Sequence record: LR745208.1
Strand: one strand, 5' to 3'
Length of the DNA stretch: 64,000 bases
The translations under genes and the position numbers were made by a program. This document shows positions 14,326-36,068 of the stretch, in pieces. The notes below the pieces were generated by a model. It had not been told where the DNA came from. It saw only the letters and a program-made list of their open reading frames with translations, and did not search any database. Numbering within the stretch: the stretch's first letter is position 1; each line of letters begins with the position of its first letter.

Positions 14326-14565
14326 ATGGACGCCATCGTTTGGATCTCCAACCGCAACCATCCCACACAGACCACCTGCAAGGTCCTCCGAACAACCCCG
14401 ACCACGATCATCGTGGACATGGTCTATCCGCACACGACAACCAACCTCAAGTTCCGGCGCTCGGACGGCAACATGACCGGGGGCAAGGTGTCCTTCTGGC
14501 TGGACGCGGAGTCCCTGAAGCAGATCAACCGAGAGATCCTTGCCACCCACACAGGGAACTGCTAG
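14326..14565 (+). CDS. hypothetical protein
   Basis: ATG after cassette. Confidence 0.75.
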   Translation: MDAIVWISNRNHPTQTTCKVLRTTPTTIIVDMVYPHTTTNLKFRRSDGNMTGGKVSFWLDAESLKQINREILATHTGNC

Positions 14566-15269
14566 TCCCAGTCGAGCATGCAGCCAAGATGGGTTGCATG
14601 CTCTTCAATGCTGTCCGCCATATCCTCAGCGGTCCTAGCCTGCTGCCCAGCGTCCTCTTCCATGACAGGACACCATGGGGCATTGAAGGACGTAGTGGGG
14701 ATACCTCGTGGGGTTCCTACCATAATTTTCTCAACGGGGCCAACCCCTGCCAGGGTCCTCGTGTAGTGGAGCCCATCGGGGCTTGGCTTGACCGGCTTCC
14801 CAAGGATTTCGGGTACATGGGCCGCACATATGACGGGTGCCCCACCAGCCAGGACAAGCTTCTCAACCCCATGGGAGACCTCACTGTATTGTCCAGGCTG
14901 GCGATAGACACGGCTCAGGAGGCTCTTGATGGCACCCCTTCCTTCGGCGCTACCATTGGACCCTGCTAGACCTCCCTTGACACCGAACCGGGTTTTCTTG
15001 CATAGCTTGAAGGCAACAGGCGTTTCCCCATCGAAGTAAATTGACCATACATCAAACTCATTCAACCCTTGGGGGGAGGAAATGATCAGCCCCAATTGCC
15101 TGTAGGTAACTTCATACATTGCCCACACTGCATCCCTGTACTGGTCGTAGTCCCCATGCCCTATCTCAGTCCATTGCCCCATTGCTTCCTTGAGAAGGGG
15201 GAGGAGGTGGGGCCGAAGAGCCGGATTCTCGTGGGCAAGTCGGACCAGTTTGGATCGAAGGGTCACCAT
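14562..15269 (-). CDS. protein with TLRSKLVRLAH leader
   Basis: shared N-terminal motif. Confidence 0.8.
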   Translation of the reverse strand: MVTLRSKLVRLAHENPALRPHLLPLLKEAMGQWTEIGHGDYDQYRDAVWAMYEVTYRQLGLIISSPQGLNEFDVWSIYFDGETPVAFKLCKKTRFGVKGGLAGSNGSAEGRGAIKSLLSRVYRQPGQYSEVSHGVEKLVLAGGAPVICAAHVPEILGKPVKPSPDGLHYTRTLAGVGPVEKIMVGTPRGIPTTSFNAPWCPVMEEDAGQQARTAEDMADSIEEHATHLGCMLDWD

Positions 15270-15288
15270 GAAACGGTAGGGGTATAGG

Positions 15289-15334
15289 CGATTCCGCTAA
15301 AAATCTCCCCTCTCGTGCCGATAGGGTATTGAGG
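15289..15334 (+). promoter_or_regulatory. sigma28-type promoter cassette (identical to 15584 copy)
   Basis: 58 bp identity including ATGAACATGA. Confidence 0.8.
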
Positions 15335-15336
15335 AC

Positions 15337-15576
15337 ATGAACATGAAGAAGCCAGCCAAGAAAAGCTACTCCCCGCGGAAGAGCAACAAGTTCGAGTTCA
15401 CCTACGTGGAGTGGGATGAGGACACAGCGGCTCACTGTGTCTTCGGGAAAGACAGTGGGTTCGCCTACGCGGCCTTCTCGGATAAAGGTGAGGCAGACAC
15501 CTACAGTGAGGACCACAACCAGAACACGCGGGATGCCATCCAGCATGTTACAGAGACCAGCCTGTTCCCCCGGTAG
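15337..15576 (+). CDS. hypothetical protein
   Basis: ATG after cassette. Confidence 0.7.
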   Translation: MNMKKPAKKSYSPRKSNKFEFTYVEWDEDTAAHCVFGKDSGFAYAAFSDKGEADTYSEDHNQNTRDAIQHVTETSLFPR

Positions 15577-15583
15577 GTAGGTC

Positions 15584-15629
15584 CGATTCCGCTAAAAATC
15601 TCCCCTCTCGTGCCGATAGGGTATTGAGG
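15584..15629 (+). promoter_or_regulatory. sigma28-type promoter cassette
   Basis: motif copy. Confidence 0.8.
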
Positions 15630-15631
15630 AC

Positions 15632-16189
15632 ATGAACATGACCACCCTACTCTACATCCACGGCCTGGAGTCTGGCCCTCGGGGGGCGAAGACTGAGGCC
15701 CTTGAGGCTGCGGGATTCACGGTGGTTTCCGAGCAGATGCCCTGCCCTCCCATCCGTGACCTGAAGGGACCAGAGGGCGCTCAACTTTTCGAGCAAAGCC
15801 TTATGATCCAGCTTCAGGCACTGGCAACCCATAAGATCGATGCCATCGTGGGGTCTTCTTTTGGAGGGGCAGTGGCCGTTGAGCTGTTGCTCCGTGGGCT
15901 CTGGGCTGGCCCCACCCTACTGCTATGCCCCGGTCACGAACTCATGGCGGAGCGAACCGGGTACCAGCTTCACTGGGAAGGGCTCGAAGGTCTCCCGGGC
16001 GAAGTCACCAAGCAGGTACTGGTGGTCCATGGTAGGGGTGATGCTGTGGTTCCCGTAGGGCACTCACAGAACCTAGTGGCAGGATCCCAGGCGACCCTGG
16101 TTCTTGTGGATGATGACCACCGCCTCTCGGCCACATCGAACACCCAGCAACTCACCAGCCTGCTTGCCCTCATCGGTGTGAGCCCCTAG
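15632..16189 (+). CDS. alpha/beta hydrolase (YqiA-like esterase)
   Basis: YIHGLES, GSSFGG, HG..D..VP, DDHRL. Confidence 0.85.
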   Translation: MNMTTLLYIHGLESGPRGAKTEALEAAGFTVVSEQMPCPPIRDLKGPEGAQLFEQSLMIQLQALATHKIDAIVGSSFGGAVAVELLLRGLWAGPTLLLCPGHELMAERTGYQLHWEGLEGLPGEVTKQVLVVHGRGDAVVPVGHSQNLVAGSQATLVLVDDDHRLSATSNTQQLTSLLALIGVSP

Positions 16190-16190
16190 T

Positions 16191-16237
16191 TGATTTCGCT
16201 AAAAAGTCCCCCTCCCATACCGATAGGTATTTGAAAG
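16191..16237 (+). promoter_or_regulatory. sigma28-type promoter cassette
   Basis: motif copy. Confidence 0.8.
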
Positions 16238-16252
16238 CGGGACCCACCCACT

Positions 16253-16474
16253 ATGAAGCCCACATACATCATCGTTCTTACCCACACCACCACGAACGTC
16301 AAAACCTACGTGGCGGCCCGGACCCAGGTGGACGGTAGCTGGTCCACTCCTCACCAGGATCTCGCTCGTGTTTACAAGACCCTGGGTGGGGCGATGCGCT
16401 GGCTGGCCGACCACCCCGAGATCGCCCTTGGTACCGGTGGCATCCAGGGCGACATTGTCACGGTCCAGGTGTGA
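16253..16474 (+). CDS. hypothetical protein
   Basis: ATG after cassette. Confidence 0.7.
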   Translation: MKPTYIIVLTHTTTNVKTYVAARTQVDGSWSTPHQDLARVYKTLGGAMRWLADHPEIALGTGGIQGDIVTVQV

Positions 16475-16728
16475 CAACCGAGAGTAAACCCCTAACCAAC
16501 CCGAGTGCCATCGCCCTCCAGGAAGCCCTGGACCAGATGGAGTACAGCAAAACTTGCATCCGCGAGAATCGGGGTTACGACAAGGAGCTAGCTCGCGAAA
16601 GCTATGTGTCTGGCCTTGGTGAGGTGCTGATCCCGGCCATGGAGATCGCCCTTGGGGACATCGAGAAGGGGCAGGACCTAGAGAAGATCGCCAGGATGAT
16701 GGTCAAGATACTGGAAGGTAAGTCATGA
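16471..16728 (+). CDS. hypothetical protein
   Basis: GTGA overlap. Confidence 0.65.
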   Translation: MTTESKPLTNPSAIALQEALDQMEYSKTCIRENRGYDKELARESYVSGLGEVLIPAMEIALGDIEKGQDLEKIARMMVKILEGKS

Positions 16729-16949
16729 GCGACTGGAAGAACTCGAAGGGGGAGTCCGTGTATATTGAATCCATCCCCTGGGTGGAGGAGGGGATGAAGG
16801 TCTACGTTCCCAAGCAGGGGGATGAGAGGGCCTACACCGCTGGCATCGTTATGATTGCTACGGGCGATGCAGCAAGGGTCTTGACCCAACTCGGGTCCCA
16901 CTGGTATCGGCTCCGGGACTGTGTGAAAATCTCACAGTCGAATTCTTAG
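16725..16949 (+). CDS. hypothetical protein
   Basis: ATGA overlap. Confidence 0.65.
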   Translation: MSDWKNSKGESVYIESIPWVEEGMKVYVPKQGDERAYTAGIVMIATGDAARVLTQLGSHWYRLRDCVKISQSNS

Positions 16950-16951
16950 GT

Positions 16952-16997
16952 CGATTTCGCTAAAAAGTCCCCTTCCCGTACCGATAGGGGATTGAGG
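16952..16997 (+). promoter_or_regulatory. sigma28-type promoter cassette
   Basis: motif copy. Confidence 0.8.
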
Positions 16998-17002
16998 ATC
17001 AC

Positions 17003-17552
17003 ATGAGATGTCTCTGAAGCATCCGTCCAGAAGGCCGAACAGGAACAACAGCGGGTTGCAGCTCAGCGGGCCTACAGAGTTGAGGGACGGAAAACATTTG
17101 CCAAGAGGGCTGCCACGGTGGTTGGGGTTGTTCTGGTCGCGTTTCTTGGTGGCCTTGGGCTCATGCACGCGCAGGGCAACAGGGTAAGGGACGAACTCAC
17201 GACCCGCATGGAAGCCGTACGCCAACGTCGGGCGGACATCTACTCAGCCACCCAGAGAGAAGCCCACATAGTGGCCTACTGGGAGCAAGTGAGTGGCATG
17301 TCAGCCCCAAGGGAACGTGACGTTTGGGAAGCCCCCCTTTCACCACGGGATCGCGCTCTGGAACGAAGCCGGGCAGAACGCATCCGTGCCAGGGATGCCG
17401 AGATCACAGGTGCTGAAAACCGAGTTCACATTGCCATCCGCCGCTATGATGAGGCTGCGGCCAACTACAACCGTTACGCAGAATTAGTCGATCCATCCGT
17501 TTCTCGTGGGTTCCCCCACCATGTCCCCTACTCCAACGAGGTTTCCCCATGA
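17003..17552 (+). CDS. lemA: LemA-like membrane protein; extra base just after ATG 17003 (in-frame ORF from 17118)
   Basis: TM segment then QRRAD and ENRVHIAIRRYDEA..YN. Confidence 0.6.
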
Positions 17553-18382
17553 ATTCGATTTCTCGTTTCGGGCTCAGCATGTTGGCTGTGCTCCTCACCC
17601 TGACCGTTGCTACGTCGGCCATCGCTTACCCGGCCATCACCCACCCGGTGACAGACCTTGCGGGAGTCCTGACTCCAGCGGAGGTTGAGGATATTGCCGC
17701 CCGGGAGCTGGACCATTTCCAGCGGACCCATGTCCAGATTGCCGTGCTAACGGTGCCCACCACCAATGGGGAACCCATTGAGGACTTCGCCAACGGAGTT
17801 GCGGGTCAATGGCGTGGAGGGCAGGCCGGGCAGAACAATGGGGTCCTAGTCGTGCTGGCCATCCGGGATCACCGATCACGGATCGAAGTCGGCTCAGGGC
17901 TCGAAGCCCAGGTGACCGATTCACAGGCAGTCGAACTGCTGGACAGCATGCGCCCATCCTTCCGGGCCAGCCAGTTCGGAGATGGCCTGCGGGGCATCGT
18001 GGGTGCCCTGATTGTGGCCACAGGGGGGAACCCTCAGATGGTCACACAGGCTGGCTGGCGCTACCATCCAATGCCCGCACAGCACAGTAGTGGGGACCAT
18101 ACCGTGCTCATTCTGTTCATCATCCTGGGGGGTTTTCTGTTCCTACTGATGCTGTGGTGGATGGCGCGAGACGAGCGGGGCAGCTACGGTTACAGCAGTG
18201 GTCGAAGCTACGGTGGGAGTGGGAGTAGCTCAACCTTCGTGTACCTGAACAACGACAGTTCGAGTTCAAGCAGCTCAAGTTCGAGTAGCTGGGACAGCGG
18301 GTCAAGCTCAAGCTCCAATGACTCCAGCTACGGTGGTGGGGGCGGTGACTTCGGTGGTGGTGGCGGAAGCAGCGGCTGGTAG
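17549..18382 (+). CDS. TPM-domain (YgcG-like) membrane protein
   Basis: VTDLAGVL, IEVGSGLE, TM, Gly/Ser tail FGGGGGSSGW. Confidence 0.9.
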   Translation: MNSISRFGLSMLAVLLTLTVATSAIAYPAITHPVTDLAGVLTPAEVEDIAARELDHFQRTHVQIAVLTVPTTNGEPIEDFANGVAGQWRGGQAGQNNGVLVVLAIRDHRSRIEVGSGLEAQVTDSQAVELLDSMRPSFRASQFGDGLRGIVGALIVATGGNPQMVTQAGWRYHPMPAQHSSGDHTVLILFIILGGFLFLLMLWWMARDERGSYGYSSGRSYGGSGSSSTFVYLNNDSSSSSSSSSSSWDSGSSSSSNDSSYGGGGGDFGGGGGSSGW

Positions 18383-18388
18383 GATCCA

Positions 18389-19464: not shown

Positions 19465-20316
19465 TTAGTCGATCACTTCAACGTGGGTGATCTTCACTTT
19501 GTGGGGATCGAACACGGCCACTTCGGGGACACCACTCACGAGGTCTGACCCGTAGTAGATGACCGAATCATAGCCCCGGCTTTTGGCCCTTTTGGCCTGA
19601 GCCTTGCTGGATGTGATGAGGGTATTGAAGACGGTAGCCACAACCGTATAGACCTTGGGGCGGTAGGCCGATGAGTCCAGGCCCACCTCATCCAAGGTGT
19701 CGTAGAGGTAGCCGGGAGCCCCAGTCGGTGCCCCACCAAACATGTCCAGTGGGGACTCCCCACTCCCAAGGGGCTTTACCTTGCTACCAATGATGTACCC
19801 GGCAACGTCATTGATAGAGTTTGGGTCTACTCCCAAGAACTTCTCAAATCCCATTGTGTCGAGGGTCCCTTGACCTGGAGTAGGATTGTCGTTCCAGAAG
19901 CCTGTGGCCCGAGGATACGTCTCCCATGCGTCAACACCCCCTTTGTAAAGGGCCTCCAGCATCCCACCGGCATTGCGGTTCTGGCTCTTGAGATCATCAA
20001 TGATTGAGGGGTCGAACCCAATGTTGCGGTTGGCCTCTGCGTACTTCTCAGCAACGTGCTTGTAGGGAGTTAGGAAGATTCCCCGGCCGTAAAACTTGTT
20101 GACCAGTTCGTCCCGGCCACGGTTCATGTCAAAGGTCTTGAAGAAAGCCGTGGTGCCATGGTAGAGGGTCGTGGGTTTCCCCTCAGGGAGCCCCTCAAGG
20201 TCATAGTTGGATAGGTTGAGAGTCTTGGCTCCCTGGAGGAGATGCCGGAAGGCAACCTTGATGGGACTGGCCTGAGGGCTCATTAGGTGTCCAACAGGGC
20301 CATTTTCGTGAGCCAT
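19465..20316 (-). CDS. ADP-ribosyltransferase-like protein with KVAFRHL leader
   Basis: LYHGT..FD..GRGIFLT..AEKYA, GYDSV, EVAVFDP. Confidence 0.6.
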   Translation of the reverse strand: MAHENGPVGHLMSPQASPIKVAFRHLLQGAKTLNLSNYDLEGLPEGKPTTLYHGTTAFFKTFDMNRGRDELVNKFYGRGIFLTPYKHVAEKYAEANRNIGFDPSIIDDLKSQNRNAGGMLEALYKGGVDAWETYPRATGFWNDNPTPGQGTLDTMGFEKFLGVDPNSINDVAGYIIGSKVKPLGSGESPLDMFGGAPTGAPGYLYDTLDEVGLDSSAYRPKVYTVVATVFNTLITSSKAQAKRAKSRGYDSVIYYGSDLVSGVPEVAVFDPHKVKITHVEVID

Positions 20317-20732
20317 CCAAAGACTTCCCGCTTTGACAGTAGGGCCAGTTCCTTGCGGGTCTTGAGATCAAAAGCTACAAACTGGGCTGCATTCTGCTTC
20401 CCAGTCGTAGGCAGGGCTGCCACGGGTTGCCCTGGTACCCGAAGGATCCATTGACCCTCTAGTTTCTCCCATTTTGCCTGATTGTCCAGGATCGTCTGGT
20501 GCCTCTGGTTCTCTTCCGTACCTGGAGTCTGGAGGTTGTTGTGGTACTGGTCCCGTAGGGCCACCTCCCGTTGCTCACGTCGCAATGCAGATGGCATCCA
20601 TTTGGCAATGGCCTCTTCATCCACGTCCCTCTTTTTGGGGCCACCAGCCGCTTCCTTCAATAGCGGAAGCAATTGCCCACGCAACTCGGGATTGGCATGT
20701 GCCAGACGAATGAGCTTGGAGCGAAGGGTCAT
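20283..20732 (-). CDS. protein with TLRSKLIRLAH leader
   Basis: shared N-terminal motif. Confidence 0.8.
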   Translation of the reverse strand: MTLRSKLIRLAHANPELRGQLLPLLKEAAGGPKKRDVDEEAIAKWMPSALRREQREVALRDQYHNNLQTPGTEENQRHQTILDNQAKWEKLEGQWILRVPGQPVAALPTTGKQNAAQFVAFDLKTRKELALLSKREVFGWLTKMALLDT

Positions 20733-20915: not shown

Positions 20916-21650
20916 ATGCCCCTCGACAAATTGGCAGCATGGCGGATTGCGTACTCCCATTGGGTATCTAGAGTTGCCCGTACCGTTCCAATGTACACGG
21001 ACGAGGCCCTCAAGGTCCTGGGGCTTCCTGCCACAGCCAGTGTTGAGGATGCCAAGAAGGCGTTCCGGACCCTCATAATGATCCACCACCCGGATAGGGG
21101 CGGGGACATCGCCAAGGCTGTACCAATTATTGAGGCCTGGACACAGTTGAAAGATGGGGTCACTATTTCCCGTCCCAACCCCACCTCCGGGACCTACCCG
21201 GGTAGCGGCTACCGTAGTCCACCCCCCAGGACCCGTCCAAGGCCACCACCGCCTCCGCCCCCAAGGCCACCACCAAGGAAGCCCGAGCCGCCCCCAGCAC
21301 AGCCGTCCCAGGGGCCATCCTCCAAGTATCCTCCCCTGAAGGTAACTTGGAAGGAAGCGGAACGGGCAACCAAGGTTCCTAATGGCACGAGTCAACCAGA
21401 AGCCAAGGACCGTCAACGGGCCGAAGACTTGATCAAGAAGGCCGCCAAAGTCCCCGGGTACGCCATTAAGATGAGTGCCTTGGCCAACCAGATGGCCAAC
21501 TCCATTGACAGCGTCGCCAAAGCCCTACGTCGCGGTCGGGCCTTCGAGGACCATGATGAAGTCCCGGGCATTGACATCCATATCATCCGGTCCATGTCCC
21601 AGATCTTCTATACCAGGGCTATGACTCTGGCTAGAGTCGCCGGGGCCTAG
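20916..21650 (+). CDS. DnaJ-domain protein with Pro-rich linker
   Basis: ALKVLGL..KKAFRTL..HHPDRGG. Confidence 0.8.
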   Translation: MPLDKLAAWRIAYSHWVSRVARTVPMYTDEALKVLGLPATASVEDAKKAFRTLIMIHHPDRGGDIAKAVPIIEAWTQLKDGVTISRPNPTSGTYPGSGYRSPPPRTRPRPPPPPPPRPPPRKPEPPPAQPSQGPSSKYPPLKVTWKEAERATKVPNGTSQPEAKDRQRAEDLIKKAAKVPGYAIKMSALANQMANSIDSVAKALRRGRAFEDHDEVPGIDIHIIRSMSQIFYTRAMTLARVAGA

Positions 21651-21655
21651 TCCAA

Positions 21656-22450
21656 ATGGCAGAGTCAATCATTCCTGTGGACCCTAACCCTGCACGGGTT
21701 GCCTTCCGGCATTTGTTGGCCTCCAGACCAATCTATATTGACAAACAGGCCCTTCAGCACTTCGTGCAAACAGACCTCATCCCATCAATCAGCAAATGGT
21801 TGAAACGCCAACCCCAGCAGAATGACCCAATAGGGTCAGTGGACCACATCGCCCAAGCAACCCTTCAGGTTGAGAAGGCAGACCAGAGGAGTTCCGATCA
21901 GGTTCGTGTCCAGATCCATGCCCGATCCTCTAGGAGCAAGGGGGTTGCTGTACTAAGCGGAAGTGCCGGGCGTGCAGCAAGAGAAATCAATGTGTGGATC
22001 AATGGAGCCCTATCCCCCGAGGATTTCCTGGTGCCCACCAAATGGTCGGATCGAATGTCTCCCGTATGGGAGTGCTCCAGTCCAGGGTGCCTCCCCTATG
22101 GCATCTATGCAGTTCTACTCCATGAAGTTACCCACATGGCCGAGGTGGCCCCGCCATCTCTTTCCTACAATCCCAGAGACGTGATTGAAAAAGGGGAGGC
22201 TGTTTGGGAGGGTTACATCAATGACCCAGGTGAAGTCCGGGCCTTCATGCAGGAAGTGGTGGATGCAGCAGAGCGTTTAGCCCCTAAACTCCGGGTTCAC
22301 ATGCGCTCCAATCAGCAACTCATGGAAACAGTGCTTACCCTGACAACCACTTGGTCCATTATTGAGAAGCACCTCAAACCTAGGGAGAGGGTCAAGATAC
22401 TCAAAGCAGTCTATGAAGTATTAGATCGAAAGGGGCTGCTGCTTGAGTGA
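21656..22450 (+). CDS. HExxH metallopeptidase-like protein with RVAFRHL leader
   Basis: LLHEVTH, YINDPGEVRA. Confidence 0.65.
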   Translation: MAESIIPVDPNPARVAFRHLLASRPIYIDKQALQHFVQTDLIPSISKWLKRQPQQNDPIGSVDHIAQATLQVEKADQRSSDQVRVQIHARSSRSKGVAVLSGSAGRAAREINVWINGALSPEDFLVPTKWSDRMSPVWECSSPGCLPYGIYAVLLHEVTHMAEVAPPSLSYNPRDVIEKGEAVWEGYINDPGEVRAFMQEVVDAAERLAPKLRVHMRSNQQLMETVLTLTTTWSIIEKHLKPRERVKILKAVYEVLDRKGLLLE

Positions 22451-26541: not shown

Positions 26542-27027
26542 ATGAACCAAAAGAAACTCAACTGCTGGGAGTTCAAGGACTGTGGGCGGAACCGGTCAAG
26601 AGGGCAACAACCCAAACAGGACTTCAAGTGTGGGACCTGTGGAAAAGTATGATCTGACTTCGCTTGCAATAAACGGAAATACTGCTCCCGGAAATGCACC
26701 AATCAAGCCGCTAGAACAGACAGACCCACCTGTCAACAGTGTGGGAAGTCATGTCGTCTTGGACGCAATCGGTTCTGCTCAAAATCCTGTGCAGCCATCT
26801 TCCAGGTGCGACCACCAGCTATGTCTTGGAGTGACTTCTATCGAAAAGCCCAGGCCGCAAATCCAGATCCACAACCTTGTGCCTGCGGGTCCCCAGGCAA
26901 ACACCGGCATCACACAGACTACACTAAACCCGAAGTCGTGGTGTGGTTGTGCGCCCCCTGTCATCTCAAGCACCACCACATTGGAGCCATTAGAGGACAA
27001 CGATTTCGCCCAGACCGCCCGCTTTAA
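26542..27027 (+). pseudogene. zinc-finger/HNH-like gene with in-frame TGA at 26650
   Basis: NCWE start, CxxC and YCSxxC repeats, HH.DY..P..V.WLC..CH..HH. Confidence 0.6.
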
Positions 27028-27487
27028 GTATGCCCCAAAAGCATCTGCCCATGACAGGTTGGCCTACTTGACATGTACCGATAGTTGTCCAGCCCACGAC
27101 ACCGTGGTGCCAGCCAAGGAGGCTAAGGATCGGGCCCCCAACTGCCCCCTGTGCAACCAGCCCCGTGAGGTCTACCAACACCCCACCGTCAAGCCGTATG
27201 GACTCGCCATCTACCACGCCAAGTTGTTGTCCTTGCCCCCACACACCAACCCCATTGCCATTGTCCCCTTCTGTGGAACTGGCATTGAAGCCAAGGCACT
27301 CCTGGATGTTGGGTTCAGGGTCATCGCCATTGATATTGATCCCCGTCACGTTGCCATGACCCAGTACAGGCTAGGTGGGGTGGGGGTAACTGTTGTAGCC
27401 GTTGGGGATGCCCCTCCAGCCACCACCACCACCACCGAAGTCCCCGCCACTGACACCACATCTTTTGAAGACCTACTGGGACTCTAA
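26990..27487 (+). pseudogene. C-terminal fragment of a DNA methylase
   Basis: RFKYAPKAS, HPTVKP, PFCGTG, IAIDID. Confidence 0.65.
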
Positions 27488-27490
27488 CAC

Positions 27491-29038
27491 ATGACCAACA
27501 CCAACCTGACACCCCCCTCCGCCGCCCCAACCAAATACACCCTTCACCACGGGGACTGCTTGGATGTCCTCAAGTCCCTACCAGCCAATTCCGTGGACGC
27601 CATCGTTACGGATCCCCCGGCAGGGATCAACTTCATGGGCAAGGATTGGGATAAGGACAAGGGTGGGCGGGACAAGTGGGTTGCTTGGATGACCGAGATA
27701 TCTCGTGAATGCATCCGCGTCATCAAGCCCGGTGGCCATGCCCTCGTGTGGGCAATTGGTCGCACATCTCATTGGACCGGCTGGGCCTGGGAGGATGCTG
27801 GCTGGGAAGTACGCGAAAAAATTACGCATTTGAATGGGCAGGGATTTCCGAAATCGTTGGATGTCAGCAAGGCGTTGGACAAACAGGCCGGAGCCGAGAG
27901 GGAAGTGGTTGGGTCGAAGGTGGGGCAACCAGGATACTCTGTGGCTCCTGGAAAAGGGCGCAACACCCTCAACTCGGCGAACGATGGCAGCCTCAACAAT
28001 TCTGACGCCGAATGTCAGATCACAGCCCCCTCCACCGACGCCGCTAAGAAGTGGGACGGTTGGGGGACGGCACTGAAACCTTCTAGTGAAGACTGGTGGA
28101 TGTTCCGTAAGCCCCTTGAAGGCACCGTAGCAGCCAATGTATTGGCCCATGGAACCGGGGCGCTCAATATCGATGGGTGTAGAATTGGATGTGAGTCTCG
28201 CCCTATCAACAACTACTCAAGTGAGGGGGCTCAAGGCTGTATGTCCCATGGTGAGGGTAAGGGTCACTCAGGTAAGGAGTACACAACCACGACAGTGTCC
28301 CAGGGCAGGTGGCCCGCAAACGCCGTCCTCAGCCACAACGAGGATTGCGTCGAAGTAGGCACCAGGAAGGTCAAGACCGGTACTGCCACCTTCAAGAATA
28401 CAGATGCCGGGACCGTGCTGGACTCCTACAGTGGGGGGCTGAAACGCCAGGACCACGGTGAGTATGGCCACGCAGACCCCGATGGCACCGAAACCGTACC
28501 CGCCTGGGATTGCACCCCCGATTGCCCCGTACGGATGTTGGACGAACAGAGCCTTGCTGGAGGCATGCACAGTGCTGGAGCCGCCCGAGACAAAACAGTA
28601 ACCTCAACCTATGAAGCATCCTCCTATGACCTGTCTGGACCCAGACCCATGGGGAGGCTAGGGGACACAGGAGGAGCCAGTAGATTCTTCTACTGCGCCA
28701 AAGCCTCCAAAGGTGACCGGGGCGAGGGTAACAATCACCCCACCGTAAAATCACAATCTCTTATGGTTTGGCTTTGCAGGCTAATCTGCCCACCCGGTGG
28801 GACCATCCTGGATCCCTTCCTGGGCAGTGGTACCACCGGTATCGCCGCCCTACTTGAGGGGTTCCGGTTCATTGGCATCGAGAAGGAGCTACCCTACTTC
28901 GAGATCGCTAAGGGACGAATCGAAAACTACAACCAACCAAAGGCTGCCCCCAAGGCGGCAACTAAGGTGGAGGGGGCAACTGAGGGTAAGAACCCCACCA
29001 CACCCGATACAGGCTCCATCCTGGACATGTTCGGGTGA
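27491..29038 (+). CDS. DNA N6-adenine/N4-cytosine methyltransferase (beta class)
   Basis: VTDPP, HPTVKS, LDPFLGSGTT, IGIEKE. Confidence 0.92.
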   Translation: MTNTNLTPPSAAPTKYTLHHGDCLDVLKSLPANSVDAIVTDPPAGINFMGKDWDKDKGGRDKWVAWMTEISRECIRVIKPGGHALVWAIGRTSHWTGWAWEDAGWEVREKITHLNGQGFPKSLDVSKALDKQAGAEREVVGSKVGQPGYSVAPGKGRNTLNSANDGSLNNSDAECQITAPSTDAAKKWDGWGTALKPSSEDWWMFRKPLEGTVAANVLAHGTGALNIDGCRIGCESRPINNYSSEGAQGCMSHGEGKGHSGKEYTTTTVSQGRWPANAVLSHNEDCVEVGTRKVKTGTATFKNTDAGTVLDSYSGGLKRQDHGEYGHADPDGTETVPAWDCTPDCPVRMLDEQSLAGGMHSAGAARDKTVTSTYEASSYDLSGPRPMGRLGDTGGASRFFYCAKASKGDRGEGNNHPTVKSQSLMVWLCRLICPPGGTILDPFLGSGTTGIAALLEGFRFIGIEKELPYFEIAKGRIENYNQPKAAPKAATKVEGATEGKNPTTPDTGSILDMFG

Positions 29039-30550: not shown

Positions 30551-30934
30551 TGTCAAGTGAATCAGTGCTGTCAAGTGAAATCGTACGTCGATTTTTCTGT
30601 TGACATCATCCCATACGATTGCCCTTGACATGCCCCGCACCCCATGCCCGCAAGGGGCCGGACCCCCCATGGTGCCCCTACCCCTGTCAAGCCAATTCGT
30701 CTGTCAAGAGAAATCGACTGGTACGAATTTGGTGCTTGACATGCCACCAACTATTAGGAGTTGCCGAATGGTTGGTTCCCGGACCCGGCCGTTGGCCCAC
30801 AGGGTCAGGTGCCTGTCAAGAGAAATCGCCCACAGAAGGGGCATCCCCTGGGGGAACCTTGTCAAGGGAAATCACCTAGCTCCTCCCGGATCAACGAAGG
30901 CTTGGATCTTGGGACTTGTTGATTTGGCTTGACA
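30551..30934. repeat. array of 10 CGATTTNNCTTGACA-like sites, both orientations
   Basis: copies at 30551, 30569, 30589, 30616, 30685, 30702, 30724, 30814, 30860, 30920. Confidence 0.85.
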
Positions 30935-31283
30935 GGAAGTCAATGGCCCCGAGGAGCCACAGGAGGCGTCCTACCTCTTTGGATGCCTCACTGCGTTCCC
31001 CGTTGGGGTCTTTAGGGAACTTTATAGTGATGTCAGCAACAGTGAAGCCAATGCCATTGCCGATACCATTCTGGATTTCCATGGCATGTTCAGCATAGTC
31101 GATCCCGTACTGTTCACTGAGGTCCAGGATTGCAGCCTCCCTGGCATCCCAAGCCCGTTTGATATGCTCCATCAGGTTGATGGGTGCGCCGCCAGCGGTC
31201 TTGAGCAAGGGCAACAGATGGGGCCGGAGAGCCGGGTTCTCTTGGGCTAGGCGGATCAACTTGGAGCGAAGGGTAGGGGCCAT
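30891..31283 (-). CDS. protein with TLRSKLIRLA leader
   Basis: shared N-terminal motif. Confidence 0.75.
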   Translation of the reverse strand: MAPTLRSKLIRLAQENPALRPHLLPLLKTAGGAPINLMEHIKRAWDAREAAILDLSEQYGIDYAEHAMEIQNGIGNGIGFTVADITIKFPKDPNGERSEASKEVGRLLWLLGAIDFLSSQINKSQDPSLR

Positions 31284-31690: not shown

Positions 31691-31706
31691 GTGCCCCCAC
31701 CCTAGG

Positions 31707-31988: not shown

Positions 31989-32204
31989 CTACGACAGGGC
32001 GTCCATGATGCCGGTCCGGATGGCCTGGATGGTTTCCTGTGACCACCGGTAGGAGCGGGCATCCGCCATGAGGTTGCCGACGATACCTTGGACATTGGCC
32101 CGGGTGACGGGGCCTACGGTGAACAGGAAATTCTCAACCGCCTTGCGGGACACGCCCGGCTGGCTGGCGAGGGATTCGATTCGTTCGTTGGTCAGGGTGG
32201 TCAT
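31989..32204 (-). CDS. phage hypothetical protein
   Basis: AVENFL..NL.ADARSYRW. Confidence 0.75.
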   Translation of the reverse strand: MTTLTNERIESLASQPGVSRKAVENFLFTVGPVTRANVQGIVGNLMADARSYRWSQETIQAIRTGIMDALS

Positions 32205-32212
32205 GGGGTTGT

Positions 32213-32259
32213 TCCTCAACTACCTATCGGTACGGGGATGGGACTTTTTAGCGAAATCG
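32213..32259 (-). promoter_or_regulatory. sigma28-type promoter cassette
   Basis: motif copy. Confidence 0.8.
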
Positions 32260-32268
32260 TGCCGGGTC

Positions 32269-32586
32269 CTACTCATCATCCTCTTCCGAGTCATCGTCTT
32301 CCTCCGAGTCATCCTCGTCCGTGTAGGGGACATCGGGGAAGTAGAGGATCTGTCCCAAACCCATGCTGTCGGTCTGGGCACTACGCAGGCCCTCGGCCAG
32401 ATCCATCAGGTGACGGCTGTTGTCCTCCGCCCCCCAGACGAGGGCAGCCAGGAACTCTCCCAGGGTGTTGTCCATGCCCAGTTCGACCCCCAGGCAGGTC
32501 TTCCCGTACATGCCCCGTCCACTGTAGGACCGGCTGGTGAAGCCCTCAGAGTCATCGATGATCTGCTGTAGGATGTGCTTGGTCAT
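32269..32586 (-). CDS. phage hypothetical protein, acidic tail
   Basis: RSYSGRGMYG..C.G; DSMGLG.I.YFP. Confidence 0.8.
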   Translation of the reverse strand: MTKHILQQIIDDSEGFTSRSYSGRGMYGKTCLGVELGMDNTLGEFLAALVWGAEDNSRHLMDLAEGLRSAQTDSMGLGQILYFPDVPYTDEDDSEEDDDSEEDDE

Positions 32587-32595
32587 GACTGCTTC

Positions 32596-32640
32596 CTTCC
32601 TTCCCTATCGGCACGAGAGGGGTAGTTTTTAGCGAAATCG
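32596..32640 (-). promoter_or_regulatory. sigma28-type promoter cassette
   Basis: motif copy. Confidence 0.8.
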
Positions 32641-33077
32641 CAACTCTGAAATAGGCCAGTCATTTCAAGCACCGTCATCATATTGGGTCCAGTTGGGGTC
32701 CTGGGTACCTCATCAAAACTAAGAGCCCAATGATTTCAATATCCGGCACGACCGTGCTGGAGGAGACAGAATCGTTTTTATGCGAAGTCGTGATTCCAAT
32801 ATTTCCCTGTTCCAATAATCCTCAATAACTCCCACTGACATAGGTCAAATCCCAATAAGGTGACTCCGGAAAGTCACCCGAGCGCGTCAAAACCAAATGA
32901 GCGATTTGGAAACGGGCTGTTCAGGGTACACGGATGTTCAGGTTGAGCGGTTCATGACGCGGGGCGTCGAACGGTGCAGGTCGGGTGCAAGATCCGCGGT
33001 CGGGGAGGCTTGGTGCACGCAACGGGCACTACGACTTCAACTTCTAGCCTCGAACAAGGGCCCGATCTGGCCCTTGT

Positions 33078-33123
33078 CGATTCCACTAAAAATCCCCATT
33101 CTCGTGCCGATAGGGTATTGAAG
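33078..33123 (+). promoter_or_regulatory. sigma28-type promoter cassette
   Basis: motif copy; heads 33133. Confidence 0.8.
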
Positions 33124-33132
33124 CAGGAGACC

Positions 33133-33339
33133 ATGGAGAAGAACACGAACCGAGATCACGTCACTGGCCAGTATGACGTGGATGATGATGCCATGTGCAC
33201 CTGTGGCCACAAGCGTGGTGAACACACCTGTGGCAAGCGCGGTACGGGGGCCTTTGAGTGCGTGGTCGAGGGGCCCGATGGCATCCTTGGAAGCGCCGGA
33301 TGCGAGTGCATGAAGTTCAATAGGGTCAGCTACCGATAG
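33133..33339 (+). CDS. small Cys/His-rich protein
   Basis: CTCGH..H..C..CEC. Confidence 0.7.
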   Translation: MEKNTNRDHVTGQYDVDDDAMCTCGHKRGEHTCGKRGTGAFECVVEGPDGILGSAGCECMKFNRVSYR

Positions 33340-33617
33340 GCTTCACCGCTACTGGCCAGTGACGTGATCTCGCAGGAGAGGCATGCTTCCAGGCCAGACC
33401 CAATGTTGTCCTGTCGGACGGCCTTCACAGCATCCAGGTGTTGGCCCGACTGCCGCAGCAACACTGCATACAGGACACTCGGGGGCTCTGGTTAGAACCC
33501 GAGGGTGACCCTCGCCTTGAGGGCCCGCATGCCCTGGCGGGCCAGTGACAACTCACTAAAGTACACCTTGCTGGTGCTGTGCATGGGAAAGTAGACCAAC
33601 TTTTTAGTGAATTCGAC

Positions 33618-33926
33618 CTACCACCAGCTCGGGGAGGCTCCTACCCAGTTCTTTTCCACCTCAGCAAGGTCCCGCTGGGCATTCCGGATGGCCATCTGGA
33701 CGGTCTTCCCGTACCACGTACGGCCTCGGCGTCCCATGGGCCCCAGGTGCAGGGCCCATACAAGCGCCGAATCCCCCTGCTCCAGGTTGGGGCAGTCCTT
33801 GTGGACGTTCGCAGGGAGGTTTTCCGGTACTACCAGACACCGAATCAGCTGTGTCCCTGGCGTTGTGCCCATGGTGAGCTTGGCCACACGGCGTTCCAGG
33901 TTCAGCAAGGCTTCTTGGATCTTCAT
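33618..33926 (-). CDS. hypothetical protein
   Basis: coupled ORF. Confidence 0.6.
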   Translation of the reverse strand: MKIQEALLNLERRVAKLTMGTTPGTQLIRCLVVPENLPANVHKDCPNLEQGDSALVWALHLGPMGRRGRTWYGKTVQMAIRNAQRDLAEVEKNWVGASPSWW

Positions 33927-33928
33927 GG

Positions 33929-34195
33929 CTAGTCAATCTCCGTTCCATACTCCGCCCAGACAGCCGGTCCGACAATCCTTTGCCCTGCCAGAACACTCGC
34001 CGTGGGGTTGAAAGGCAGACCCTTCAGGACCCCCTCCTCGTTGACCACCAGGACATACCGTCGCTCACCGGGCAGCGGTCGCACAATCTCAATCCACCCA
34101 CCAACAGCCTCATGCAGCTGGTCCAGGGACAGCTCTGGCCCGTTCAGGCCATGAAGTGCCGTGACTGATCCGTCTGTACCGATGATTTTTGCCAT
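33929..34195 (-). CDS. DUF3846-like protein
   Basis: LDQLHEAVGGWIE..VNEEG..LPFN.TAS..IVG. Confidence 0.75.
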   Translation of the reverse strand: MAKIIGTDGSVTALHGLNGPELSLDQLHEAVGGWIEIVRPLPGERRYVLVVNEEGVLKGLPFNPTASVLAGQRIVGPAVWAEYGTEID

Positions 34196-34197
34196 GG

Positions 34198-34443
34198 CTA
34201 CTTTCCCAGTCCGAATTCGTCGATGGTGATGATCAGGGTCTGCCGCTGAACCTCAGCGACCGCCTCATTGAACTTCCATGCCTTGTAGGCATCGCTGACT
34301 GCCTTGTTGAAGTTACCGTCCGTACCCCCAGCCACATCACGGTCGAGTAGCTCCTTCCAGTACCTCTTGGCCTCCTCAACCTCTTTGAGGGCCATCCGGT
34401 AGGCAACTGCCGCAACCGTAACATGCATGTTCATCTTGTTCAC
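34198..34443 (-). CDS. hypothetical protein
   Basis: coupled ORF. Confidence 0.65.
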   Translation of the reverse strand: MNKMNMHVTVAAVAYRMALKEVEEAKRYWKELLDRDVAGGTDGNFNKAVSDAYKAWKFNEAVAEVQRQTLIITIDEFGLGK

Positions 34444-34643
34444 GGCCCAGTCTCCTCCAAAAGTTCCAGCTCGTCCTCCGACCAGGGGGCATCATCCTCA
34501 AACTCGTCATCCCACCGGATGAAGAACTCCAGGTGGACATCATCCACAGCGATGATGGTTCCCCTGGCCGCTGTATCGTCCTCTCCAAGACACAGCCCGG
34601 GCTTGACTCGAACTCGATCATGAAGCCTCATTGGTTTCCTCAA
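34440..34643 (-). CDS. SH3-like small protein
   Basis: DRVRV..GTI. Confidence 0.6.
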   Translation of the reverse strand: MRKPMRLHDRVRVKPGLCLGEDDTAARGTIIAVDDVHLEFFIRWDDEFEDDAPWSEDELELLEETGP

Positions 34644-34888
34644 TACTTCCCCGAGACAATCCCGTTGGCCAGCTCGATGGCATCCCTACGAAAGAAGTAT
34701 GTGCCCACGATGCCCCCGTTCAGGTACACCGTGAACCGAAGCCGGGGCGTGGGGTTGAAAACGTTGCCATTCTTGGGGTAGAGGTGCCCAATGACCACAC
34801 GCTCAATCGTGTACCCCGCCGCCTTGGCCCCCGCCGAAAGCCCCACCACGCTGAATGACGTGTGCCCGAGTTCGTTGATGGGATTCAT
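34640..34888 (-). CDS. hypothetical protein
   Basis: ATG after cassette. Confidence 0.7.
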   Translation of the reverse strand: MNPINELGHTSFSVVGLSAGAKAAGYTIERVVIGHLYPKNGNVFNPTPRLRFTVYLNGGIVGTYFFRRDAIELANGIVSGKY

Positions 34889-34893
34889 AGGTG

Positions 34894-34939
34894 CCTCAAT
34901 ACCCTATCGGCACGAGAAGGAGGATCTTTAGTGAAATCG
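34894..34939 (-). promoter_or_regulatory. sigma28-type promoter cassette
   Basis: motif copy. Confidence 0.8.
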
Positions 34940-35057
34940 ACCTGCCTCAATGCCCACCGGGGCCAAAACCTAACCCAAAGGGCACCATCAGCAGCCTCAA
35001 GTTGACAAATAGTTCAATGGTTTCGTCAAGACCTATGGATTGGTCAGACTCCCAGAG

Positions 35058-35165
35058 CTATGGGTACGGGAGGCTCTGCAGGGAGTCCAGCAACTTCTCG
35101 GTCTGGGCCCGACGCACCTGCAACTGGGCCACAATTGCCTTGACGAGCTGGTTGGGATCCCGCAT
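35058..35165 (-). pseudogene. fragment paralogous to C-terminus of 37525..37923
   Basis: MRDPNQLVKAIVAQL vs MRDPNQLVKAVVAGL. Confidence 0.6.
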
Positions 35166-35298
35166 CGATCTCAGGACATCCGAATAGAGCCTAGCAGGAC
35201 ATCCCACCCCGCGCTGGCCTGAGAAGCCTCTTCGGGTTTTTCTAGGATGCCCTGCCAGGACCTACTACCCATCCCGAGCCATATGGTGTCCATCCCTG

Positions 35299-35345
35299 CC
35301 TTCAAATACCTATCGGTATGGGAGGGGGACTTTTTAGGGAAATCG
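35299..35345 (-). promoter_or_regulatory. sigma28-type promoter cassette
   Basis: motif copy. Confidence 0.8.
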
Positions 35346-35536
35346 ACATTGGAAGAGCTACCAACATCCTTTCCTCAGACCGAGCTCGCTCATCATGGTC
35401 ATCCTGAGGGGGTGGGTTCATGGTTGGGATCCTCGCTGGGGCTGTTCGGAATGTCAAGGGCGGAGTAGGCTCGAAATTGAAGTTGTAGTGCTCGTTGCGC
35501 TGACCCAGGGACGGAGCCCACACCCCTGGGTCTTGT

Positions 35537-35637
35537 CCACCGGACCCAAAACCACACCCAAATGACACCAATGAGACACATCGGCTTACGAAATCATTGG
35601 ACTTTTCAGAATTGGTCACTTTTGGGGGTCCAGGACA
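35537..35637. repeat. ~100 bp R2 element, full copy
   Basis: CCAAAACC left arm, TACGAAATCATT core, TTGGTCACTTTTGGGGGTC right arm. Confidence 0.8.
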
Positions 35638-36068
35638 GTCCCCACGGCGAGCGCCCCTGCAACCCGATCCCAGAAGGCCTCGGTATCCATGTCATCGAGG
35701 TGGATCCTGACCTTCGTGATGCCATAGTCCCGTTTGATGGTGTTTTCAGCGATCCTGCGGTACCCAGCATCCTTGCTCTTTAGGGCTGTGAAGACTTCGT
35801 TGGCTGCCTTCAGGGTGTCCTTGAACCCCCGTACCTCATGCTGGAACACCACCACGAGGTTGCGATCCAGGAGGGTACTCACCTCAGTCCTCCAATGGGC
35901 AACCCACTTGGTCTGGCCATTCTTCTCGGCCAGCTGAGCCTTGTAGAACTCCAACAGAGCCCCTCCCGTGTGTTCCTCCACCTTGTCCTTGAAGGTCTCT
36001 CGGCTGTAGGCCATGGCCCTAAGAATACGCGTAGCGACCCGTTTGGCTGTTGGTTTCAAATCCGGCAT
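35616..36068 (-). CDS. protein with KRVATRIL leader; ends in R2-encoded LDPQK
   Basis: 150 aa ORF. Confidence 0.75.
   Translation of the reverse strand: MPDLKPTAKRVATRILRAMAYSRETFKDKVEEHTGGALLEFYKAQLAEKNGQTKWVAHWRTEVSTLLDRNLVVVFQHEVRGFKDTLKAANEVFTALKSKDAGYRRIAENTIKRDYGITKVRIHLDDMDTEAFWDRVAGALAVGTVLDPQK

What the first reader, a model, noticed from the sequence alone, without database searches (positions are those of the whole stretch)
14562..36068. Shared N-terminal leaders (TLRSKLIRLA and xxRVAxRxL) on unrelated proteins
Seen: TLRSKL(I/V)RLA(H/Q)xNPxLRxxLLPLLK begins 14562, 20283 and 30891; KVAFRHL, RVAFRHL, RVATRIL and RVART lie near the N-termini of 19465, 21656, 35616 and 20916. Bodies are unrelated and none is directly headed by a sigma28 cassette. 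Known: T4 internal proteins use a short N-terminal capsid-targeting sequence. Inference: a modular capsid-packaging tag delivering diverse effectors at infection.
Basis: partly seen in the sequence, partly recalled or inferred. Interest (0 to 1): 0.7.

Follow-up and report, generated by a model that had tools for sequence, protein, structure and literature searches.

The report
Portable address tags on huge-phage proteins
A 485-kb uncultured phage puts one of two short, strongly conserved peptide tags at the ends of many unrelated proteins; the main tag marks thousands of protein families from uncultured, mostly large phages. It most likely docks these proteins to a shared site, possibly the capsid interior, but where it sends them is untested.

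Summary
The window is bases 1-64000 of LR745208.1, a 485-kb uncultured phage.

**Leader A**
- It is a 24-residue module, LRsKLIRLA[HY]x[NK]PxLRxxLLPL[LI]K, predicted to form a helix-turn-helix.
- It heads three unrelated window genes and occurs 11 times in the genome, 10 of them at an N-terminus.
- Synonymous sites are saturated while the peptide is kept, so selection acts on the protein.
- It matches no Pfam, PHROG or PDB entry and is absent from every other GenBank phage.
- It is nearly absent from 185,579 bacterial and archaeal genomes.
- It is found in 3,022 metagenomic protein clusters and on at least 51 viral contigs, many over 100 kb, often in tandem gene arrays.
- About two-thirds of copies are N-terminal. 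The rest are internal, C-terminal or multi-copy.

**Leader B**
- The motif [KR]VAxR[FYH]L is short but real: 16 copies against 3 expected, and orthologues keep it at the N-terminus.

**Cargo** includes an ADP-ribosyltransferase, a GNAT-fold protein, proteins with an HExxH metallopeptidase signature and an RNA ligase.

A modular docking tag is well supported. Capsid packaging is plausible but untested: I found no conserved cleavage site and no linkage to head genes.

The parts
14562..15269 (-). Gene A1 (235 aa): leader A followed by a GNAT-fold body
   Evidence: ORF. AF2 model with pLDDT 75.7 and pTM 0.67. All top Foldseek PDB matches are GNAT acetyltransferases. Orthologues keep the leader; the pT24 homologue lacks it.
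15189..15260 (-). Leader A core in A1 (LRSKLVRLAHENPALRPHLLPLLK)
   Evidence: 70.1 bits. AF2 predicts helices at residues 4-14 and 16-28.
20283..20732 (-). Gene A2 (149 aa): leader A followed by a body with no recognised family
   Evidence: 69.3 bits. An in-frame stop lies 8 codons upstream of the ATG.
20655..20726 (-). Leader A core in A2 (LRSKLIRLAHANPELRGQLLPLLK)
30891..31283 (-). Gene A3 (130 aa from the ATG at 31283): leader A followed by a body with no recognised family
   Evidence: 66.3 bits. The start is inferred from the family pattern, in which the M lies 2-4 residues before the core.
31200..31271 (-). Leader A core in A3 (LRSKLIRLAQENPALRPHLLPLLK)
19465..20316 (-). Gene B1 (283 aa): leader B followed by an ART-PolyVal ADP-ribosyltransferase domain
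   Evidence: Pfam PF18760, E 9.1e-12, 46.4 bits against a cut-off of 31.2.
20239..20259 (-). Leader B motif KVAFRHL in B1
21656..22450 (+). Gene B2 (264 aa): leader B followed by a body with an HExxH (LLHEVTHMAE) signature
   Evidence: No Pfam or PHROG hit.
21695..21715 (+). Leader B motif RVAFRHL in B2
35616..36068 (-). Gene (150 aa) with the looser leader B form KRVATRILRA at 36021-36041
   Evidence: It scores 19.9 bits in the B-motif HMM, but it was one of the seeds of that model.

Best explanation
Leader A, and with weaker evidence leader B, is a portable docking or 'address' peptide.

**Shown**
- Leader A is a self-contained 24-residue unit predicted to form a helix-turn-helix.
- It has one hydrophobic face (L1, L5, I6, L8, A9, L15, L19, L20, L22, L23) and nearly invariant R2, R7, R16, H/Y10, P13 and P21.
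- It is attached, mostly at the extreme N-terminus, to proteins with no other similarity.
- It is kept by purifying selection.
- It is found almost only in viral sequence, much of it from large phage contigs.

**Inferred**
- A unit this small cannot bury its hydrophobic face by itself, so it must bind a partner.
- Ten or more different proteins per genome would bind the same partner. That many-to-one arrangement would freeze the peptide sequence.
- The most likely partner is a phage-made assembly. The leading candidate is the inside of the procapsid, so that tagged enzymes are packed into the head and ejected with the DNA. This would work like the T4 capsid-targeting sequence or the coat-binding helix-turn-helix of the P22 scaffolding protein.
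- Leader B would be a second, shorter tag of the same kind, found at either end of a protein.
- The tagged genes behave as mobile accessory genes, inserted at variable positions and often in tandem arrays.
For: - **Copies in this genome:** 11 copies at 48-70 bits, with the next hit at 10 bits; 10 are N-terminal. The bodies are unrelated.
- **Selection:** pS 0.61 against pN 0.15.
- **Structure:** AF2 predicts two helices per module, with pLDDT 71-89.
- **Modularity:** orthologues of the GNAT-fold body keep the leader, while the pT24 homologue lacks it.
- **Spread:** 3,022 cluster representatives with E<=1e-3 among 1.84 billion. There are 91 stretches on at least 51 IMG/VR contigs, 21 of them >=100 kb.
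- **Near-absence outside uncultured viral sequence:** only 4 hits, all on metagenome-assembled genome (MAG) contigs, in 596 Gb of bacterial and archaeal genomes. No other record among 50,697 GenBank phages has it.
- **Position:** in a less biased viral sample, 94 of 140 copies are N-terminal and 10 C-terminal, and 120 of 129 ORFs carry a single copy.
- **Arrays:** tagged genes form tandem arrays with divergent bodies.
- **Cargo:** ART-PolyVal, GNAT fold, HExxH proteins, RNA ligase. ART and GNAT domains are also found in polyvalent proteins that phages inject with their DNA (PMC7824862).
- **Leader B:** enriched 16 against 2.9. It is kept at the N-termini of orthologues and of an unrelated neighbouring gene in another phage. 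It is also seen at extreme C-termini.
Against: - Nothing ties the tags to the capsid.
- Tested neighbours of tagged genes are DNA and RNA metabolism genes. Among 148 neighbouring ORFs in 15 other phage loci, only about 5 hit head families, which is about what chance would give.
- Besides the 10 N-terminal copies, this genome has only one other copy of module A. It sits inside a 588-aa protein among replication genes. So no scaffold-like protein next to a coat gene was found.
- The residues after the module (K-[EKSQ]-A-A) are the same for N-terminal and internal copies, so no N-specific protease site is evident.
- Across metagenomes, many proteins carry 2-7 copies separated by charged linkers, or one copy at each end. 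That fits a multivalent or self-associating module at least as well as a cleaved leader.
- AF2 gave no confident packing of two modules in one chain (pTM 0.26), so self-association is neither shown nor excluded.
Confidence: 0.4

Rival explanations
1. Module A binds to itself. Hairpins would pair into helical bundles. Single-copy proteins would be recruited by multi-copy 'sticker and spacer' proteins into a cytoplasmic assembly such as a replication or virus factory, not into the capsid.
For: - Many metagenomic proteins carry 2-7 copies separated by K/E/D-rich linkers.
- Some carry one copy at each end, including a 63-aa protein made of two modules only.
- Some proteins have closely spaced tandem copies (P0076, P0132).
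- The neighbours of tagged genes in this genome are replication and nucleic-acid genes.
Against: - LR745208 itself encodes no multi-copy protein, so no multivalent hub of this kind exists in this phage.
- AF2 did not pack the two modules of a two-module protein with any confidence (pTM 0.26).
- 120 of 129 ORFs in the viral sample carry a single copy.
Confidence: 0.25
2. The tags bind a conserved host machine such as a chaperone, protease, RNA polymerase or ribosome. This would bring phage enzymes to their substrate or control their folding or turnover.
For: - The peptide is almost unchanged between GC-rich and AT-rich phage contigs that probably infect different hosts. A universally conserved target would explain this.
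- A basic, leucine-rich helix is a typical chaperone-binding sequence (my own knowledge, a lead only).
- A J-domain protein is encoded next to A2 and B1 (its score of 26.2 bits is just below the Pfam cut-off of 27.8).
Against: - A many-to-one interaction with a phage partner explains the conservation equally well.
- The motif is absent from cellular genomes, so no host protein uses the same docking motif.
- No known host-binding motif matched in Pfam or PDB.
Confidence: 0.15
3. There is no tag function. The shared segments are remnants of common ancestry, meaning paralogues whose bodies diverged beyond recognition, or an integral cap of each fold.
For: - For leader B, four carriers (21656-22450, 64640-65776, 201728-203053, 462936-464312) share HExxH and a second downstream motif, so they may be distant paralogues.
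- Two of them are detectably related.
Against: - Leader A sits on bodies of different sizes and on a GNAT fold whose pT24 homologue lacks it.
- It occurs at N-terminal, internal and C-terminal positions.
- The leader is more conserved than the orthologous bodies.
- Leader B also sits on an ADP-ribosyltransferase and an RNA ligase.
Confidence: 0.07
4. The conservation acts on the DNA or RNA (a recombination site, a translation signal or a regulatory RNA), not on the peptide.
For: The segment lies at the 5' end of most of the genes.
Against: - Synonymous sites are saturated (pS 0.61) while the peptide is kept. Nucleotide identity is 72% against 80% amino-acid identity.
- Copies also occur inside and at the 3' end of genes.
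Confidence: 0.02

Closest known systems
Capsid-targeting sequence (CTS) of phage T4 internal proteins, and the hypervariable internal-protein loci of T4-like phages
   Same: A short N-terminal peptide is shared by otherwise unrelated, fast-evolving small proteins, often in tandem. It is carried by accessory or enzyme proteins such as ADP-ribosyltransferases. The T4 facts are established knowledge; papers holding the term are listed (for example PMC3012670, PMC7697877).
   Different: - Leader A is 24 residues and forms a helix-turn-helix, not about 10 residues.
- It has no sequence match in T4 or any other GenBank phage.
- It is not followed by a conserved protease site.
- It also occurs internally, at C-termini and in several copies per protein.
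[quoted passage not shown]
   Same: Both are small helix-turn-helix units with conserved basic residues that dock onto a larger assembly and work as portable loading tags. The abstract of 10.1101/2022.12.13.520362 says this domain is essential for coat binding; PMC9962691 covers cargo use.
   Different: - The P22 unit sits at the C-terminus of a scaffolding protein encoded next to the coat gene.
- Here, copies are mostly N-terminal on enzymes and unknown proteins.
- This genome's only non-N-terminal copy lies among replication genes.
- No sequence similarity was detected.
Cargo-loading peptides of encapsulins
   Same: Both are short peptides at either end of diverse cargo enzymes. Encapsulin peptides direct cargo into a shell with the HK97 capsid fold (my own knowledge, a lead only).
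   Different: The consensus is different, no encapsulin-type shell gene was looked for or found nearby, and the shell here would be a DNA-filled phage head.
Polyvalent proteins of phages and conjugative elements (Iyer et al. 2017, cited in PMC7824862)
   Same: The domain repertoire overlaps: an ART-PolyVal hit, a GNAT fold and HExxH metallopeptidase-like proteins. PMC7824862 says such domains occur in proteins injected with phage DNA.
   Different: Here the domains are separate small proteins, each with a short terminal tag, not parts of one giant multidomain protein.
Polymorphic toxin and effector families with a conserved N-terminal trafficking domain and variable C-terminal domains
   Same: Both have a conserved N-terminal 'address', swappable bodies and gene arrays (my own knowledge).
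   Different: Those are cellular secretion systems with much larger N-terminal domains. This tag is 24 residues and essentially absent from cellular genomes.

Membership tests
T4-type capsid-targeting sequence | A short peptide at the extreme N-terminus of otherwise unrelated proteins | tested here: met
   In this genome 10 of 11 leader A copies start 2-4 residues after the M. In the viral sample 94 of 140 are N-terminal. The remaining third are internal or C-terminal.
T4-type capsid-targeting sequence | The leader ends in a prohead-protease cleavage site (L/I-x-E in T4) and is removed | tested here: inconclusive
   L-K-E follows the core in 6 of the 11 genome copies (LPLLKEA). E is present at that position in only 38 of 113 N-terminal copies overall, and the same context follows internal copies. 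Cleavage itself cannot be tested here.
T4-type capsid-targeting sequence | Sequence relatedness to the T4 leader | tested here: not met
   tblastn with the leader consensus against 50,697 phage records, T4-like phages included, at E<=10 finds only LR745208.
T4-type capsid-targeting sequence | Tagged proteins are present inside virions, and the tag is sufficient for packaging | not testable with these tools
   The phage is uncultured and no proteome is available.
P22-type scaffolding coat-binding helix-turn-helix | A small helix-turn-helix with conserved basic residues | tested here: met
   AF2 predicts two helices per module, pLDDT 71-89. R2, R7 and R16 are nearly invariant. This is a predicted structure only.
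P22-type scaffolding coat-binding helix-turn-helix | Located at the C-terminus of a scaffolding protein encoded beside the coat gene | tested here: not met
   LR745208 has no C-terminal copy. Its single internal copy is in a 588-aa protein flanked by ribonucleotide reductase, helicase, clamp-loader and UvsX genes.
Leucine-rich repeat variant (LRV) / HEAT-like repeats | Profile similarity to the LRV repeat unit | tested here: not met
   hhalign of the 122-sequence module profile against LRV units from P0140 gives probability 0.12% and E 0.46. The LRV hits are cargo domains that follow the module.
ART-PolyVal ADP-ribosyltransferase (body of gene 19465-20316) | Match to Pfam PF18760 above the gathering score | tested here: met
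   46.4 bits against a cut-off of 31.2, E 9.1e-12. The match covers residues 45-95, which align to profile positions 3-48 of 140, so it is only the N-terminal part of the domain.
GNAT acetyltransferase (body of gene 14562-15269) | GNAT fold | tested here: met
   All 50 top Foldseek PDB matches are GNAT enzymes, best E 2.1e-4, TM 0.40-0.61. There is no Pfam hit, and catalytic residues were not checked.
Any curated protein, phage-protein or structure family (for leader A itself) | Match in Pfam-A, PHROGs or PDB sequences | tested here: not met
   No family at E<=0.1 for the three window proteins. A profile search of PDB gave only a chance match, E 0.16.

The most novel reading that the evidence does not exclude
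A clade of uncultured, mostly very large phages runs its own protein-sorting code. It would have at least two short terminal 'zip codes' (A and B) recognised by a phage-made receptor. These load a large and fast-changing set of enzymes and unknown proteins into the capsid, or into another phage-built compartment, for delivery at the next infection. Multi-copy versions would serve as multivalent scaffolds. This would be a general cargo-loading system for DNA-filled phage heads, comparable to encapsulin loading peptides, covering thousands of cargo families.
Probability: 0.3. Interest if true: 0.85.

Novelty: new variant of a known kind. Interest (0 to 1): 0.65.

Why it matters
- **Unannotated proteins.** Most proteins of huge uncultured phages have no known role. 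A 24-residue tag shared by more than 3,000 protein clusters gives a common handle on them: find what the tag binds, and the destination of thousands of unknown proteins follows.
- **If the destination is the capsid.** These phages would carry a large, rapidly changing set of pre-made enzymes into the cell. The identified ones are an ADP-ribosyltransferase, an acetyltransferase-fold protein, metallopeptidase-like proteins and an RNA ligase. That bears on how huge phages overcome host defences in the first minutes of infection.
- **Practical use.** A short portable loading tag would also help in packing proteins into phage capsids in the laboratory.
- **If the destination is something else.** The tag would point to a phage-specific assembly or a host target that has not been described.

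Tried and rejected
1. **Known families for leader A.** Pfam, PHROGs and a PDB profile search gave nothing.
2. **LRV/HEAT repeat origin.** Rejected by hhalign, probability 0.12%. The LRV hits are cargo domains.
3. **Recent duplication or a DNA-level signal.** Rejected by saturated synonymous sites.
4. **Cellular origin.** A degenerate DNA pattern found only 4 metagenome-assembled genome (MAG) contigs in GTDB.
5. **N-specific protease site after the leader.** Not supported.
6. **The 588-aa protein with the internal copy as a scaffolding protein.** Its neighbours are replication genes, and it has no PDB or phage-database relatives.
7. **Linkage to head genes.**
   - Neighbours in LR745208 are nucleic-acid enzymes.
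   - In 15 other loci head families are rare, and I could not find which ORFs they were.
   - A conserved block next to leader genes in L017 and L029 contains a vWA-domain protein and unknown proteins, not recognisable head genes.
8. **Shared promoter upstream of leader genes.** A CTATC pentamer is enriched, in 6 of 10. Genome-wide it is not clean enough to assign a timing class.
9. **Packing of two modules within one chain.** AF2 pTM 0.26, uninformative.
10. **Leader B outside this clade.** A word-based search with B2 residues 1-40 found nothing. A DNA pattern would be too unspecific, so only orthologues and neighbours in fetched loci were used.
11. **Literature.** No paper prints the motif.
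12. **RVART in the J-domain protein.** Rejected as a member of leader B.

Full report
**What the window is.** The window is identical to bases 1-64000 of LR745208.1, an unannotated 485,034-bp 'uncultured phage' genome. I fetched the rest of the record in pieces. All genome-wide scans were run on the separate pieces.

**Leader A: the observation.** Three minus-strand genes begin with almost the same peptide:
- 14562-15269: MVTLRSKLVRLAHENPALRPHLLPLLKEA
- 20283-20732: MTLRSKLIRLAHANPELRGQLLPLLKEA
- 30891-31283, counted from the ATG at 31283: MAPTLRSKLIRLAQENPALRPHLLPLLKTA

An HMM built from the three copies and run on the six-frame translation of the whole genome gives 11 hits at 48-70 bits, and the next hit scores 10 bits. 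Ten hits lie 2-4 residues after a start codon, several with an in-frame stop a few codons upstream. One lies at about residue 351 of a 588-aa ORF. Without the leader, the bodies have no BLASTP similarity (best E 0.06). They also have no common Pfam or PHROG family. The 72-nt cores are only 72% identical in DNA but 80% identical in protein, with pS 0.61 and pN 0.15. The copies are therefore old and are kept by selection on the peptide.

**Leader B: the observation.** VAFRHLL occurs three times in the genome and never in shuffles. The looser pattern [KR]VA.R.[LI] occurs 16 times against 2.9 +/- 1.6 expected.
- About ten carriers have it within 25 residues of a start codon.
- One has two copies at its extreme C-terminus.
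- Orthologues of the carrier at 64640-65776 in three other phage contigs begin MALSASRVASRYL, MHLSPHKVASRFL and MTPCAVRVATRYL. An unrelated gene next to one of them begins MSPSISRVATRHL.
- In other loci the motif is again seen at N-termini and at extreme C-termini, 10 copies against 2 in shuffles.

So B is real but short. RVART in the J-domain protein does not.

**Anatomy of module A.** From 248 distinct copies the core is L-R-s-k-L-I-R-L-A-[H/Y]-x-[N/K]-P-x-L-R-x-x-L-L-P-L-[L/I]-k. A9, P13, R16, L20 and P21 are nearly invariant. AlphaFold2 predicts two helices joined at the N-P turn. In the window protein these are residues 4-14 and 16-28, with pLDDT 71-87. The same is predicted for both modules of a two-module protein, with pLDDT 80-89. 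Ten hydrophobic positions and three conserved arginines in 24 residues suggest a unit that must dock onto something. That last step is inference.

**Distribution.**
- A profile of the three window leaders finds 3,022 cluster representatives (E<=1e-3; 283 at E<=1e-10) among 1.84 billion proteins.
- A word-based search finds 52 small proteins, almost all with the module at the N-terminus and with unrelated bodies.
- Among 50,697 GenBank phage records, only LR745208 has it.
- A degenerate DNA pattern for the core finds 4 stretches in 596 Gb of species-representative bacterial and archaeal genomes, all on metagenome-assembled genome (MAG) contigs.
- The same pattern finds 91 stretches in IMG/VR. 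Among the 80 listed I count 51 contigs, of which 21 are >=100 kb and 10 are >=200 kb, the largest 497 kb.
- Tagged genes often lie in tandem arrays (L018, L022, L030, L036).
- No paper in the library prints the motif.

**Position within proteins.** In the sample around the IMG/VR pattern hits, 94 of 140 distinct copies are N-terminal, 36 internal and 10 C-terminal. Of 129 ORFs, 120 have one copy. The highest-scoring metagenomic proteins are different. They carry 2-7 copies separated by long K/E/D-rich linkers, or one copy at each end, or close tandem copies. Other short motifs travel with the module in those proteins but are absent from LR745208. The residues after the module (K-[EKSQ]-A-A) are alike for N-terminal and internal copies.

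**Cargo.**
- The body of 14562-15269 has a GNAT fold.
- Its orthologues at 55-59% identity keep the leader. The homologue in the cultured Tenacibaculum phage pT24 has no leader. This is direct evidence that the leader is an add-on.
- Leader B carriers include an ART-PolyVal ADP-ribosyltransferase (19465-20316) and an RNA ligase (347198-348706).
- Four further B carriers have HExxH plus a second downstream acidic motif. They are probably zinc metallopeptidases; this rests on the motifs only.
- Among 84 long metagenomic carriers of module A, Pfam finds GNAT, RelA/SpoT, WGR, LRV and HEAT domains and a few domains of unknown function. Most have nothing.
- PMC7824862 notes that ART and GNAT domains occur in polyvalent proteins that phages inject with their DNA.

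**Was a link to the capsid found? No.**
- Neighbours of tagged genes in LR745208 are a ribonucleotide reductase, helicases, a clamp loader, UvsX, an SbcC-like nuclease, an RNA ligase, a nucleotidyltransferase and homing endonucleases.
- Among 148 neighbouring ORFs in 15 other phage loci, the head families hit are one major head protein, one portal, one large terminase and two maturation proteases. The rest are mostly DNA-metabolism families.
- A block conserved between LR745208 (336-345 kb) and loci L017 and L029 has leader A genes inserted at different places. Its recognisable member is a vWA-domain protein, not a head protein.
- The tagged genes therefore look like mobile accessory genes with no fixed neighbourhood.
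- T4 internal-protein genes are not tied to the head gene cluster either (established knowledge), so this is neutral rather than negative.

**Mechanism.**
- Well supported (about 0.8): A, and less securely B, is a portable protein-docking tag under strong constraint, because many proteins share one partner.
- Much less certain: what the partner is. I rank the procapsid interior first, at about 0.4. The reasons are the N-terminal bias, the enzyme cargo typical of injected proteins, the arrays of variable bodies, the near-restriction to viral contigs (many of them large), and the likeness to the P22 coat-binding helix-turn-helix.
- Second: a self-associating module that builds a cytoplasmic assembly (0.25). 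It is favoured by the multi-copy and 'both ends' proteins. It is weakened because this genome has no multi-copy protein.
- Third: a conserved host target (0.15).
- Common ancestry without a tag function (0.07) and a nucleic-acid-level signal (0.02) are poorly supported.

**Comparison with what is known.** It works like a T4 capsid-targeting sequence, a P22 scaffold helix-turn-helix or an encapsulin loading peptide. It is not a member of any of these by sequence. It also fails or leaves open their defining features: a protease site, a scaffold context and presence in virions. It is not an LRV or HEAT repeat. The peptide family itself appears undescribed.

**Limits.**
- All structure statements are predictions.
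- The counts of contigs are my own tally of the table.
- The 'internal' class may include N-terminal copies preceded by long in-frame non-coding stretches.
- The B-motif HMM is circular for its seeds.

Noticed in passing
window 3374-40857 (17 copies); LR745208 3-160 kb mainly: A sigma-28-like promoter cassette, AAAGT-N11-12-(R)T(R)CCGATA, has 31 strict copies in the genome, almost all in the first 160 kb. Its translations (QYPIGTR, NTLSARE, LSVREGDF) are the most repeated 'peptides' in six-frame ORFs.
   Followed up: partly
window 93-1535 (+); paralogues at LR745208 181572-183056 and 460776-462230: A TnpB / IS605 OrfB-like ORF (Pfam PF07282, PF01385; PHROG transposase) is present in at least three copies in the phage genome.
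   Followed up: no
window 20916-21650 (+): A J-domain protein (DnaJ PF00226, 26.2 bits, just under the cut-off of 27.8) with a proline-rich middle lies between the leader A gene 20283-20732 and the leader B gene 21656-22450. Its 'RVART' is not a leader B copy.
   Followed up: partly
15-35 nt upstream of leader A starts at 20732, 226068, 275658, 351543 and 390948; also at window 20896: The pentamer CTATC (as GGCTATCC or CCCTATC[CA]) is enriched upstream of leader A genes, in 6 of 10 (uncorrected p about 7e-7). One of those six is the reverse of a sigma-28-like cassette. It could be a promoter element, but genome-wide occurrences are not clean.
   Followed up: partly
window 21656-22450; LR745208 64640-65776, 201728-203053, 462936-464312: Four leader B proteins share HExxH and a downstream (D/N)PEE-F-x-E-x-F motif. 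They are likely a family of zinc metallopeptidases with no Pfam match.
   Followed up: partly
window 14562-15269 and 15632-16189; Tenacibaculum phage pT24 BPT24_057 and BPT24_056: The GNAT-fold gene lies beside a 185-aa ORF, window 15632-16189. I did not test that ORF. In phage pT24 the homologue of the GNAT-fold gene lies next to a gene annotated 'esterase', so the pairing may be conserved.
   Followed up: no
metagenomic proteins P0016, P0023, P0028, P0043, P0055, P0073, P0090, P0131 and others: Other short motifs travel with module A in charged linkers: GCEKLPEGPMRDNCEKK, EPDEPYMKGEFTQQE and F.NP.TGN.V.F.SLP....K.R..W. None is in LR745208. A further short motif, KAWAIAWS, seen in this genome's protein at 462351-462917, occurs there once.
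   Followed up: partly
LR745208 339568-340974 (-): A 469-aa ORF with a Cys-rich CxC...CxxC segment is 60-67% identical to ORFs next to leader A genes in two other phage contigs. It has only a weak 'virion structural protein' PHROG hit.
   Followed up: partly
window 26582-29038 (+): There are two adjacent ORFs. The second (27491-29038, 515 aa) is a DNA methyltransferase (PF01555; PHROG 67, E 1.7e-64). The first (26582-27487) was not tested.
   Followed up: no
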